Shown here one piece after another: positions 52,028 through 54,099 of a stretch of DNA of 63,565 nucleotides. Position numbers and translations under genes: made by a program. A model generated the notes under the pieces. It did no database searches. It saw only the letters and a program-made list of their open reading frames with translations, and was not told where the DNA came from. Within the stretch, counting starts at the first letter, position 1. The number at the start of each line of letters is the position of its first letter. This DNA comes from Sminthopsis crassicaudata (lineage: Eukaryota): NCBI RefSeq assembly GCF_048593235.1, contig NC_133623.1, positions 56,510,501-56,574,065 on the forward strand. The letters are read 5' to 3'.

Positions 52028-54099
52028 ATGCCTCTGCGTGGCCTCACGTCCCTGCTGCTGCTGCTGCTGCTGGGCCTGGGTGAGCCGGGAGACCCAGGCC
52101 TGGGGCCGGCGCTCGGGGCTAACAAAGGCTTCCTCTCCCGGGCTCGGCAGGGATGGTGCTGGGGGTGAGGGAGAGGTGGGACAGACACGGGGGAGGCAGG
52201 GGCCGGCCCAGGCTTCCGACAGTGAGCCCACTCAGCACCCTGGGTAAGGTAAAGACTGGCCCAGGCTTCAGTGAGGCAGCTCAGGACCCCGGGTCAGGGC
52301 TGGGGCCGGCCTAGGCTTCCAACAGTGAGCCCACTCAGCACCCTGGGTAAGGTAAAGACTGGCCCAGGCTTCAGTGAGGCAGCTCAGGACCCCGGACAGC
52401 GCTGAGCAGCAGCTCCCTTAGGCTGAGTCCCAGGACTTCCTCTCTAAAGCCTCCGCTTCCCTTCTTTCCCACAGCTGGCGCTGTACCTCTCTCTCGGCAG
52501 GAGGTGAGGGCTCAAGACCCCACACTCTCACCCCCAAATCCCCTCTGTTCCTGGCCCAGAGCTCCATTTCTCCGAGTGACTGTCCTGCATGACCCCAGGT
52601 CCCCAGATCCATCCTCTGTCTGTAAGCATCTCCCGCGCCCCAGGCCTCTCCTTGGACCTTGCCCCCTTTTCCTGAAAGGCCCTCAGTTTCCCCGTTGTGC
52701 CTCACTGCCCCTCCTAGGTCACCCGATGCCTTGAAGAAGCCCTCCAAGACAAGCTAAGTCCGGGAGGCCCTCGGGAGGGTCCTTGCACACAGCTCTTCCA
52801 AGAAGGTATGAAGGTGGGCCCCCATCCCCCTCCTGGCTCCCACATCCCCCAGCCCATTAACGCCACCCTTCCTGCCCCTAGATGAGCGGCTTACATCCCT
52901 GCTCCAGACCCTAGAGAGGCTTAGGAACCAAGGTAGGAGCAGGACCCCTGACTGGAGGGGGGGAGAGGTGCACACCAGCTCTGCTGGGGGGGTCCCGTGG
53001 GGGAGACAGGAGCAAATGAAGGGGGGGGGGGATGACCACCGTGCCTGATCCTCTGCCCTTTCTCCCTCAGAGATCTCCAAGCACCATCTGAGTCCCGAGC
53101 CCGAGGCAGAGAGAGAGGAGCAGGAGGAGGCAGAGGAGGAGGATTTCAGAAAGAAAAAGAGGGGGCGTGGGGAGGCGGAGGGGGAGAAGATGCAGGGCCA
53201 GGAAGTGAGAGAGGAGGAGGAGGAAGAGGAGGAAGAGGTGAAAGCCAAAGGAAAGTCAGAGATCAGGGTGCAGGAGGGGAGGGGGCAGCCCAGGGCTAGA
53301 GAGGAGGAAGAGGAGGACCAGAAGAAGAAGAGGAGGGGGCCTGTGCAGGAAGAGGAGGCAGAGGCCTGGGGCCTGGGCCTGGAGAAACGCGTGGCTGAGA
53401 AGGCCAGTGACGAGGAGACTGCCCAGTTTGAGGAGGAGGAGAAGGGGGTGAGGCTGTCTGGGGGGGGCCACAGCTTGTGGCAGGGGGCCAGCCCCGCCCA
53501 CAGACCCCCCAACCCCGCGTCCCGGCTGGAGCAGGAGGAACAGGAGGAGAAGCAGGTGAACCAGCTAGACTGGCGGACCCCTGTGGGCTCTGGAGGGTGG
53601 GCTGGGGCGGGCTGGGAAGATTCCATTTCAGGCCTGCTCAGCAGCCAGTTGACACTGCTTAAGCACTGACTGTTTACCAAGTGCTGAGTTAAGCACTAGG
53701 GATACAAAAAGAGACAAGAGGCAGCGCCTGCCCTCAAGGAGCTTACAGTCTAAGGGCAGAGCACTGTAGACGGAGCAGGGCCTGGACAGGCCGGACCGGG
53801 ATGGCCAGCAGGGCAAGGCCCCGCCCCTTTCCCACCATTCCTGGCAGCTCTCCTAAGCCTCTGTGTTGCATAAGAGGTGCCAACCTGCATGAGCAGTAAT
53901 GACATCGGGTTCCACCCTGTGCCAGCCTGGATAGGGACCACCAAGGCCACAGCTGGGGAGGGGGGTGTTGGGGAGGGGAGGCCCTCAGACCACTGAACGT
54001 TACTCCCCCACCCCCCAGGAACACCGTGAACTGGAGCGCCTGGAGCAGATGGGGGAGGAGCTCAAGAGGGCGGCCGAGGTGCTAAGCAAGAGGGGCTGA
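52028..54099 (+). CDS. CCER2: Coiled-coil glutamate-rich protein 2; secreted, chromogranin-like; 6 exons, 261 aa
   Basis: Exons 52028-52079, 52475-52503, 52718-52805, 52882-52932, 53071-53555 and 54019-54099, summing to 786 nt in frame. Leu-rich signal peptide, VTRCL..GPC loop, [17 protein letters not shown] block, E-rich body. Lies between SARS2 and NFKBIB as in human. Confidence 0.92.
52199..52395 (+). repeat. 103-bp-period tandem duplication in CCER2 intron 1
   Basis: Near-identical copies starting at about 52201 and 52304. Confidence 0.9.

What the first reader, a model, noticed from the sequence alone, without database searches (positions are those of the whole stretch)
52882..52932. 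Extra 51-nt symmetric exon in CCER2 matching CHGA exon 4 (vasostatin region), apparently absent in human CCER2
Seen: a canonical acceptor (CCCCTAG|) and donor (|GTAGGA) flank a phase 1-1 exon encoding [17 protein letters not shown]. From memory, CHGA exon 4 is DERILSILRHQNLLKELQDLALQ, while human CCER2 runs straight from the Cys loop into the big exon. Inference: this is an ancestral granin exon kept in marsupials and lost or skipped in eutherians. It would give a vasostatin-I-like N-terminal fragment bounded by the RKKKR site.
Basis: partly seen in the sequence, partly recalled or inferred. Interest (0 to 1): 0.7.

Follow-up and report, generated by a model that had tools for sequence, protein, structure and literature searches.

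The report
Ancestral granin exon kept in marsupial CCER2
The 51-base exon is a real, conserved coding exon of the dunnart CCER2 gene: a shortened copy of an old 69-base exon that reptiles, amphibians and chromogranin A still show and that placental mammals have lost, which marks CCER2 as a chromogranin-type gene.

Summary
Observation confirmed; interpretation supported, with amendments. The window is the fat-tailed dunnart (Sminthopsis crassicaudata) SARS2-CCER2-NFKBIB locus.

- **The exon.** Bases 52882-52932 are exon 4 of six. It has an AG acceptor and a GT donor, is phase 1-1, and encodes [17 protein letters not shown]. It is already part of the 261-aa database model P0001.
- **Marsupials.** The same 17 residues occur in all six annotated marsupial CCER2 proteins. 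Length and splice sites were checked in four marsupial genomes and hold.
- **Eutherians.** About 125 eutherian models lack the exon. Five eutherian intron 3 sequences show no detectable remnant.
- **It is ancestral.** Turtle and caecilian CCER2 carry a 69-nt phase 1-1 exon at the same position. Squamate, frog and coelacanth proteins carry the same 23 residues, for example DERVLAMLHHQHLLTELEELAHQ. The marsupial exon is this exon minus 18 nt.
- **Link to granins.** Non-mammalian CCER2 passes the Pfam Granin cut-off. Its N-terminus is 51-57% identical to a true chromogranin A, including DERIISILRHQNLLKELQELA.
- **Structure.** AlphaFold2 places exon 4 at the most confident part of a long helix that starts at the second loop cysteine.

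Not verified: expression (no RNA-seq here), the borders of CHGA exon IV, the monotreme state, and cleavage at RKKKR. No paper in the library links CCER2 to granins, though database annotations already hint at it.

The parts
52028..52079 (+). CCER2 exon 1: start codon at 52028 and signal peptide ([17 protein letters not shown]), ends in phase 1
   Evidence: Exact match to P0001 residues 1-17; GT donor at 52080
52475..52503 (+). CCER2 exon 2 ([10 protein letters not shown])
   Evidence: Exact match to P0001; AG at 52473-52474 and GT at 52504
52718..52805 (+). CCER2 exon 3: granin-type disulfide loop ([29 protein letters not shown]), ends in phase 1
   Evidence: the two Cys are invariant in alignments A1 and A3
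52857..52861 (+). Candidate branch point TTAAC, 21 nt upstream of the exon 4 acceptor
   Evidence: Kept as TTACC, TTAAC or CTAAC in the other three marsupial loci; function inferred
52882..52932 (+). CCER2 exon 4, the finding: 51 nt, phase 1-1, encodes (D)[16 protein letters not shown]. It is a shortened orthologue of the 69-nt exon 4 of non-mammalian CCER2 and matches the DERILSILRHQNLLKELQ segment of chromogranin A
53071..53555 (+). CCER2 exon 5: large acidic exon. It starts (E)ISKHHLSPE, matching reptile ENAKHRLGHE, and holds the CCER2 signature [22 protein letters not shown]
53148..53162 (+). RKKKR polybasic site (residues 100-104), candidate prohormone-convertase or furin cleavage site closing an N-terminal fragment of about 80 aa
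   Evidence: A basic site is conserved at this alignment position in all CCER2 orthologues; cleavage itself is inferred
54019..54099 (+). CCER2 exon 6: C-terminal granin-like motif [26 protein letters not shown] plus the stop codon
   Evidence: comparable C-termini in CHGA-type P0200 and shark CHGB P0201

Best explanation
Bases 52882-52932 are a genuine coding exon (exon 4 of 6) of the dunnart CCER2 gene. It descends from a 69-nt, phase 1-1 exon that was already present in the common ancestor of tetrapods and the coelacanth. That exon has its counterpart in the chromogranin A segment just after the disulfide loop (the start of chromofungin/vasostatin-1). In the line leading to marsupials the exon lost 18 nt in frame: 23 codons became 17, and roughly the MLHHQH part went. 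In the line leading to eutherians it stopped being used, and its sequence has since decayed beyond recognition inside intron 3. Because it is phase 1-1, the reading frame survives its removal. Shown here: the exon's position, phase and sequence, its conservation in marsupials, its orthologues outside mammals, and its absence in eutherians. Inferred: how it works in the protein. The 17 residues form the middle of a long alpha-helix that begins at the second loop cysteine and packs back on the first helix of the loop. This lengthens the N-terminal granin domain, the part that in chromogranin A serves sorting and aggregation in secretory granules and yields vasostatin-type peptides. Cleavage at the conserved basic site (RKKKR, residues 100-104) would then release an N-terminal peptide of about 80 aa in marsupials, against about 62 aa in eutherians.
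For: Exon anatomy and exact coding of P0001. Present in all six annotated marsupial CCER2 proteins, with a clean 17-column gap in 18 eutherians and in about 125 eutherian models. Same 51-nt exon, AG/GT and branch-point motif in opossum, possum and wallaby DNA. Pairwise pN/pS is 0.2-0.6; exon identity is 0.75-0.94 without indels, while flanking introns are 0.56-0.88 identical with indels. The exhaustive profile search and word search found CCER2 in a turtle, squamates, a frog, caecilians and the coelacanth, all with the CCER2 signature [15 protein letters not shown] and a 23-aa DERV/I... segment. The turtle locus lies next to SARS2; its exon 4 is 69 nt, phase 1-1. The same holds in a caecilian. 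Dunnart versus Rhineura N-terminus: 45 bits, E 5e-12, spanning exons 3-5. Exon-only permutation test: p 0.0003-0.005 against non-mammalian CCER2 and 0.002-0.026 against CHGA-type P0200. Non-mammalian CCER2 versus P0200: 51-57% identity, E 1e-28 to 3e-30. The PDB 6r2x chromogranin-A peptide aligns to Rhineura residues 48-69. Pfam Granin scores 29-40 bits (cut-off 25) on six of the seven non-mammalian CCER2 proteins scanned. The AlphaFold2 model of residues 18-112 has helices at 25-40 and 49-79, with the highest pLDDT (block means 96 and 87) over the exon 4 residues.
Against: No transcript data could be consulted, so inclusion of the exon in dunnart mRNA rests on the database model and on conservation. 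One opossum-family model (Gracilinanus agilis isoform X2, P0144) joins exon 3 directly to exon 5, so the exon may be skipped in some transcripts. The dunnart protein itself gets no Pfam Granin hit, and its direct BLASTP to CHGA-type P0200 is not significant (E 4); the link to chromogranin A is transitive. A simple hydrophobic-moment test did not show significant amphipathicity, except in opossum. The borders of CHGA exon IV were not verified on genomic DNA. Cleavage at RKKKR and any sorting or peptide function are untested.
Confidence: 0.85

Rival explanations
1. The exon is a marsupial novelty: intron sequence that became an exon after the split from eutherians. On this view its likeness to chromogranin A is chance or convergence.
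For: Direct dunnart-to-CHGA similarity is not significant. No remnant is found in eutherian introns.
Against: Turtle and caecilian CCER2 have an exon at the same position and phase. Its peptide aligns with the marsupial one (p as low as 0.0003). The flanks also match: QEDER before it, and HQE-x-x-KHH-L-G/S-x-E after it.
Confidence: 0.03
2. In marsupials the exon is an alternatively spliced cassette exon that is on its way out. It would be included in only some transcripts or tissues, so the 261-aa protein is one of two main isoforms.
For: It is phase 1-1, so skipping keeps the frame. Gracilinanus agilis isoform X2 (P0144) skips it. The exon has already lost 18 nt, and its C-terminal third varies among marsupials.
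Against: Splice signals are strong and conserved, and pN/pS is below 1 over roughly the whole marsupial radiation. The main models of six species include it. The one skipping model is an odd 121-aa product that also removes most of exon 5.
Confidence: 0.2
3. Eutherians still have the exon but annotation misses it, for example because it is tissue-restricted and rarely included.
For: Eutherian intron 3 (240-371 nt) is about as long as marsupial intron 3 + exon 4 + intron 4 (243-312 nt).
Against: None of about 125 eutherian models, isoforms included, has an insert. DNA and protein-level scans of five eutherian introns do not beat dinucleotide shuffles: p is 0.09-0.94 and 0.05-0.69, and the best hits lie at inconsistent positions.
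Confidence: 0.03

Closest known systems
Chromogranin A (CHGA), the segment after the disulfide loop: start of chromofungin (CgA47-66) within vasostatin-1. Reviews say it lies in exons II-V, with exon III encoding the loop (PMC5395093, PMC12074958)
   Same: It follows the Cys-loop exon directly and starts with DER. It has the hydrophobic pattern L/I..L/I L....LL.EL..L. It is 23 residues long in non-mammalian CCER2. Non-mammalian CCER2 is 51-57% identical to CHGA-type P0200 over the first 70-80 residues.
   Different: The marsupial version is 6 residues shorter. CCER2 has K/Q-E-D where CHGA has the integrin-binding R-G-D. CHGA has a further small exon V and the KK end of vasostatin-1 at a different distance. 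The CHGA exon borders were not verified here.
Non-mammalian CCER2 (turtle P0151/L009, caecilian P0190/L010, squamates P0170-P0199, frog P0171, coelacanth P0197)
   Same: These are orthologous genes: SARS2 is the neighbour in the turtle, and they share the [15 protein letters not shown] signature. They have the same six-exon layout, with exon 4 in phase 1-1.
   Different: Exon 4 is 69 nt, not 51. The proteins are 340-440 aa, against 255-279 aa in marsupials. They pass the Pfam Granin cut-off, whereas the marsupial proteins do not.
Eutherian CCER2
   Same: Same locus, signal peptide, Cys loop, signature motif and C-terminus.
   Different: It has five exons and no exon 4. Its big exon begins EMCETEPYGC, a second cysteine pair found only in eutherians.
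Chromogranin B (CHGB, secretogranin-1), seen here as shark P0201
   Same: Signal peptide, Cys loop, acidic big exon and C-terminal granin motif. It runs from the loop exon straight into the big exon, as eutherian CCER2 does. Its big exon is exon 4 according to PMC8201018.
   Different: No DER helix follows the loop, and the protein is much longer.

Membership tests
Granin family, chromogranin A/B type (Pfam PF01271) | Pfam Granin HMM hit above the gathering score | tested here: not met
   The dunnart protein P0001 and eight other therian CCER2 proteins get no PF01271 hit even at E 10. Orthologues from reptiles and the coelacanth score 29-40 bits against a cut-off of 25, so membership of the gene lineage is supported only transitively.
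Granin family, chromogranin A/B type (Pfam PF01271) | Signal peptide followed by an N-terminal disulfide loop (two Cys about 20 residues apart) encoded by its own exon | tested here: met
   Exon 1 is a leucine-rich signal sequence. Exon 3 encodes C31-x18-C50. Both Cys are invariant across CCER2, CHGA-type P0200 and CHGB P0201. The disulfide bond itself is not shown.
Granin family, chromogranin A/B type (Pfam PF01271) | Large acidic, Glu-rich exon with several di- or polybasic sites | tested here: met
   The exon 5 translation shows runs of E and the sites RKKKR and KKKRR.
Granin family, chromogranin A/B type (Pfam PF01271) | Conserved C-terminal motif on a separate last exon (..E.LE.....EL.K.A..L...RG) | tested here: inconclusive
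   The last exon encodes [26 protein letters not shown]. It looks like the C-termini of P0200 and P0201, but the segment is too short for a significant pairwise score and no separate test was run.
Granin family, chromogranin A/B type (Pfam PF01271) | Storage in dense-core secretory granules and regulated secretion | not testable with these tools
   Papers only report CCER2 as a marker of Merkel cell carcinoma and of hair cells.
Counterpart of CHGA exon IV | Lies directly after the Cys-loop exon and before the acidic region | tested here: met
Counterpart of CHGA exon IV | Sequence homology to the CHGA segment DERILSILRHQNLLKELQ | tested here: met
   The PDB 6r2x CHGA peptide aligns to Rhineura CCER2 residues 48-69 (E 0.029 against the PDB). 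P0200 versus non-mammalian CCER2 gives E 1e-28 to 3e-30. The marsupial 17-mer against P0200 gives p 0.002-0.026 by permutation.
Counterpart of CHGA exon IV | Same exon borders, phase and length (69 nt, phase 1-1) in CHGA itself | not tested
CCER2 exon 4 is 69 nt, phase 1-1, in the turtle and the caecilian, and 51 nt in marsupials.

The most novel reading that the evidence does not exclude
CCER2 is a third chromogranin-type granin whose N-terminal 'vasostatin' module has been remodelled stepwise in mammals. The ancestral state is a 23-residue helix exon. Marsupials trimmed it to 17 residues, where it may be a regulated cassette exon. Eutherians deleted it and gained a second cysteine pair (EMCETEPYGC) in its stead. 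Marsupials would then make an N-terminal CCER2 peptide of about 80 aa, with a helix that placental mammals cannot make and with its own sorting or signalling activity in Merkel, hair-cell or neuroendocrine tissue.
Probability: 0.2. Interest if true: 0.6.

Novelty: new variant of a known kind. Interest (0 to 1): 0.5.

Why it matters
CCER2 is used as a marker of Merkel cell carcinoma and appears in hair-cell and small-cell lung cancer data sets. Its function is unknown, and no paper in the searched library ties it to granins.

Exon 4 is the piece that makes the relationship plain. With it, non-mammalian CCER2 is more than 50% identical to chromogranin A across the sorting and vasostatin domain. 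Without it, as in eutherians, the likeness falls below what Pfam detects.

The lineage pattern (69 nt, then 51 nt, then none) is a clean natural experiment on what this helix does in a granin N-terminal domain. It also warns that results on human or mouse CCER2 may not carry over to other vertebrates. As an evolutionary event, however, loss of a symmetric exon is ordinary, and the marsupial exon is already in public gene models.

Tried and rejected
- **Pfam on single exons.** Exons 3, 5 and 6 gave no hits. Full-length therian proteins gave no Granin hit either.
- **Second word search.** The search with profile A1 listed only eutherians among its best 120, so it added no outgroups.
- **DNA remnant in eutherians.** Smith-Waterman of marsupial exon 4 with its splice flanks against intron 3 of sloth, dugong, horseshoe bat, lion and rat did not beat dinucleotide shuffles. 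The MAFFT alignment of the region showed only noise there.
- **Protein-level remnant.** A scan of the same introns in three frames with seven exon 4 peptides gave p 0.05-0.69.
- **By-eye donor resemblance.** A CAAAG|GTAYAGG motif in eutherian introns resembles the exon 4 donor, but the statistics do not support it and it was dropped.
- **Amphipathic helix.** The hydrophobic moment at 100 degrees was significant only for opossum, so amphipathicity is not claimed.
- **Genomic look-ups.** None was on record for frog P0157 or for Gracilinanus isoform P0144.
- **Rfam.** No matches in 50000-56000.
- **ESM Atlas.** The feature search put chromogranin A clusters first (0.86-0.88). This was used only as a lead.
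- **Joined model.** My own spliced exon model was never joined or searched. Exons were searched by reference, and the full-length work used the database protein P0001.
- **Human sequence.** No human contig was fetched or compared. Primate proteins appeared only in result lists and in the motif listing. The PDB chromogranin-A peptide was read from the tool's alignment and not searched further.

Full report
**What is in the window.**
The finding sits in a six-exon gene on the + strand. The exons are 52028-52079, 52475-52503, 52718-52805, 52882-52932, 53071-53555 and 54019-54099. Exon translations by reference gave four readings:
- the Cys loop [29 protein letters not shown];
- the 16 full codons [16 protein letters not shown];
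- a Glu-rich big exon;
- a C-terminal exon ending KRG.

A word search with exon 5 returned a 261-aa protein, P0001. It is named coiled-coil domain-containing glutamate-rich protein 2 of Sminthopsis crassicaudata and is 100% identical. Exact matching of P0001 to the window recovers all six exons, with the finding as residues 57-73. Neighbouring genes in related loci are a seryl-tRNA synthetase upstream and an ankyrin-repeat gene on the other strand downstream. Earlier notes of this scan place NFKBIB and SIRT2 in the window. My own joined exon model was never searched; full-length work used the database protein.

**Check of the observation.**
The exon is not new to annotation, because P0001 already contains it.

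In an alignment of 24 CCER2 proteins, the 17 residues are present in all six marsupials: dunnart, Tasmanian devil, antechinus, brushtail possum, tammar wallaby and grey short-tailed opossum. They form a clean 17-column gap in all 18 eutherians. A motif listing of all 139 proteins then in hand showed that every eutherian model that includes the loop runs ...GPCxxLLHKE straight into MCETEP....

Genomic loci of opossum, possum and wallaby (L001, L004, L005) hold the same 51-nt exon with AG, GT and a CTAAC/TTAAC/TTACC motif. Among the four marsupial genomes the exon has no indel or stop. Its pairwise pN/pS is about 0.2-0.6, including a TCC/AGC serine switch. Its identity (0.75-0.94) is at or above that of the indel-rich flanking introns (0.56-0.88). 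The sample is small, but it points to selection on the peptide.

**Eutherians.**
Sloth, dugong, horseshoe bat, lion and rat loci (L002, L003, L006-L008) have five exons. Their intron 3 is 240-371 nt, about the same as marsupial intron 3 + exon 4 + intron 4 (243-312 nt). Exon 3 ends in phase 1 and the big exon begins in phase 1, as in marsupials, so dropping a phase 1-1 exon keeps the frame.

No trace of the exon was found. Smith-Waterman at the DNA level gave p 0.09-0.94 against dinucleotide shuffles. Three-frame peptide scans gave p 0.05-0.69. The multiple alignment shows nothing convincing. The data therefore cannot say whether the exon was deleted or decayed in place.

**Direction of change.**
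Pfam and the word search left the family open. I therefore ran the one exhaustive profile search, using six marsupial and three eutherian CCER2 proteins. Besides therian fragments it found four longer proteins (344-421 aa). Their sources name three of them CCER2: Carettochelys insculpta (turtle), Rhineura floridana (amphisbaenian) and Geotrypetes seraphini (caecilian). The fourth is an unnamed protein of Discoglossus pictus (frog). A third word search with the Rhineura N-terminus added some twenty squamates, more turtles, Microcaecilia and Latimeria.

These proteins share three features:
- most carry the CCER2 signature [19 protein letters not shown];
- most end in ...L.ELKRG;
- right after the Cys loop they have a 23-residue segment, for example DERVLAMLHHQHLLTELEELAHQ, followed by ENAKHRLGHE.

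The marsupial sequence [17 protein letters not shown] + [10 protein letters not shown] aligns to this with one 6-residue gap: [17 protein letters not shown]. Three tests support the alignment:
- The exon alone beats shuffled versions with p 0.0003-0.005.
- The dunnart N-terminus matches Rhineura at E 5e-12 across exons 3-5.
- It matches the coelacanth at E 3e-7.

In the turtle locus (L009, seryl-tRNA synthetase upstream) and the caecilian locus (L010) the segment is a separate 69-nt exon in phase 1-1, within the same six-exon layout. The exon is therefore ancestral. It was shortened by 18 nt on the way to marsupials and lost on the way to eutherians. Monotremes were not available, so the shortening cannot be dated more closely.

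**Relation to chromogranin A.**
Six of the seven non-mammalian CCER2 proteins scanned pass the Pfam Granin gathering score (29-40 bits against 25). The match starts at profile position 4 and, in the turtle, covers the loop and the DER segment. Microcaecilia and all therian proteins do not pass.

The same word search returned P0200, an unnamed 420-aa protein. It has no CCER2 signature, scores 85.6 bits for Granin, and carries ...CLETLRGDERIISILRHQNLLKELQELA... with a CHGA-type C-terminus. I take it for a true chromogranin A.
- Rhineura and coelacanth CCER2 are 51-57% identical to P0200 over the first 70-80 residues (E 1e-28 to 3e-30).
- A search of solved structures aligned Rhineura residues 48-69 to the chromogranin-A peptide of PDB 6r2x, TLRGDERILSILRHQNLLKELQ.
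- Shark chromogranin B (P0201) shares the loop but has no DER segment.
- The dunnart protein is not significantly similar to P0200 directly, so the link is transitive.

Reviews state that CHGA exon III encodes the loop cysteines, that exons II-V encode the vasostatin region, and that chromofungin is CgA47-66 (PMC5395093 and PMC12074958). The 23-residue length of the non-mammalian CCER2 exon agrees with it.

**How it probably works.**
An AlphaFold2 model of dunnart residues 18-112, built on alignment A3, has mean pLDDT 75. It shows:
- a helix over residues 25-40;
- a Pro/Gly loop;
- one long helix over residues 49-79;
- a third helix.

The highest confidence (block means 96 and 87) falls on the exon 4 residues. 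Exon 4 thus supplies the middle of the helix that starts at the second loop cysteine. Its leucines at positions 4, 7, 8, 11 and 14 would give one hydrophobic stripe, but a crude hydrophobic-moment test was not significant, so I do not claim amphipathicity.

A basic site lies 25-35 residues after the exon in every CCER2: marsupial EDFRKKKRG, eutherian DFKKRE, squamate EDVKKRD, caecilian EELKKRN and turtle AELRRRE. It is a plausible convertase site that would close an N-terminal peptide of about 80 aa in marsupials and about 62 aa in eutherians. This, and any role in granule sorting, aggregation or peptide signalling by analogy with chromogranin A, is inference.

Eutherians have a cysteine pair (EMCETEPYGC) at the start of the big exon that no other group has. 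This may partly replace what was lost, which is speculation.

**Rivals.**
- A marsupial-specific gain is contradicted by the turtle and caecilian exons.
- An overlooked eutherian exon is contradicted by about 125 models and by the intron scans.
- Alternative splicing in marsupials stays open. One model, Gracilinanus agilis isoform X2 (121 aa), joins exon 3 to exon 5 and also removes most of the big exon. No read data could be consulted.

**Known or new.**
The marsupial exon is in public gene models. Some databases already label reptile orthologues with Granin, 'Secretogranin' or 'Chromogranin A' names. No paper in the searched library connects CCER2 with granins; the six papers holding both words only list them side by side as markers.

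I rate this a new variant of a known kind: a lineage-specific trimming and loss of a conserved granin exon. It is moderately interesting, chiefly because it exposes what CCER2 is.

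Noticed in passing
window 52195-52395: A 103-nt tandem duplication (2.0 copies, 96% identical) lies inside CCER2 intron 1.
   Followed up: no
L002, L003, L006, L007 (start of the big exon); proteins: Eutherian CCER2 starts its big exon with EMCETEPYGC, a second cysteine pair absent from marsupials ([10 protein letters not shown]) and from reptiles and amphibians (ENAKHRLGHE). Murid rodents have lost the first of these Cys again (EIFETEPHGC).
   Followed up: partly
P0144 (Gracilinanus agilis isoform X2, XP_044523352.1): A 121-aa marsupial model skips exon 4 and also splices out most of the acidic exon, joining ...RRLGQE to EQHELERLEQ.... 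Its locus was not on record, so the junctions could not be inspected.
   Followed up: partly
P0201 (Scyliorhinus canicula secretogranin-1), residues about 75-95: Shark chromogranin B has ...EESEKHHFGEKG... shortly after its Cys loop. This resembles the start of the CCER2 big exon (ENAKHHLGHEG, EISKHHLGPE) and may be a shared granin feature.
   Followed up: no
window 53385-53440 (exon 5); all CCER2 proteins: The motif [16 protein letters not shown](E/A)EEKGV is almost invariant from coelacanth to eutherians. It is far more conserved than the rest of the acidic exon and is absent from CHGA-type P0200. It looks like a candidate processed peptide or binding site flanked by a basic residue pair.
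   Followed up: no
P0184, P0187, P0191, P0193, P0196, P0198: Several squamate CCER2 orthologues, which all carry the CCER2 signature, are named chromogranin-A or cilia- and flagella-associated protein 251 in public records. These look like naming errors.
   Followed up: partly
P0132, P0021, P0028, P0149 and similar predicted proteins: Many predicted eutherian 'proteins' read through intron 3 or start inside it. Their translations share ...SQLAAQR..F/SLFPP just before EMCETE, which reflects a conserved 3' end of eutherian intron 3.
   Followed up: no
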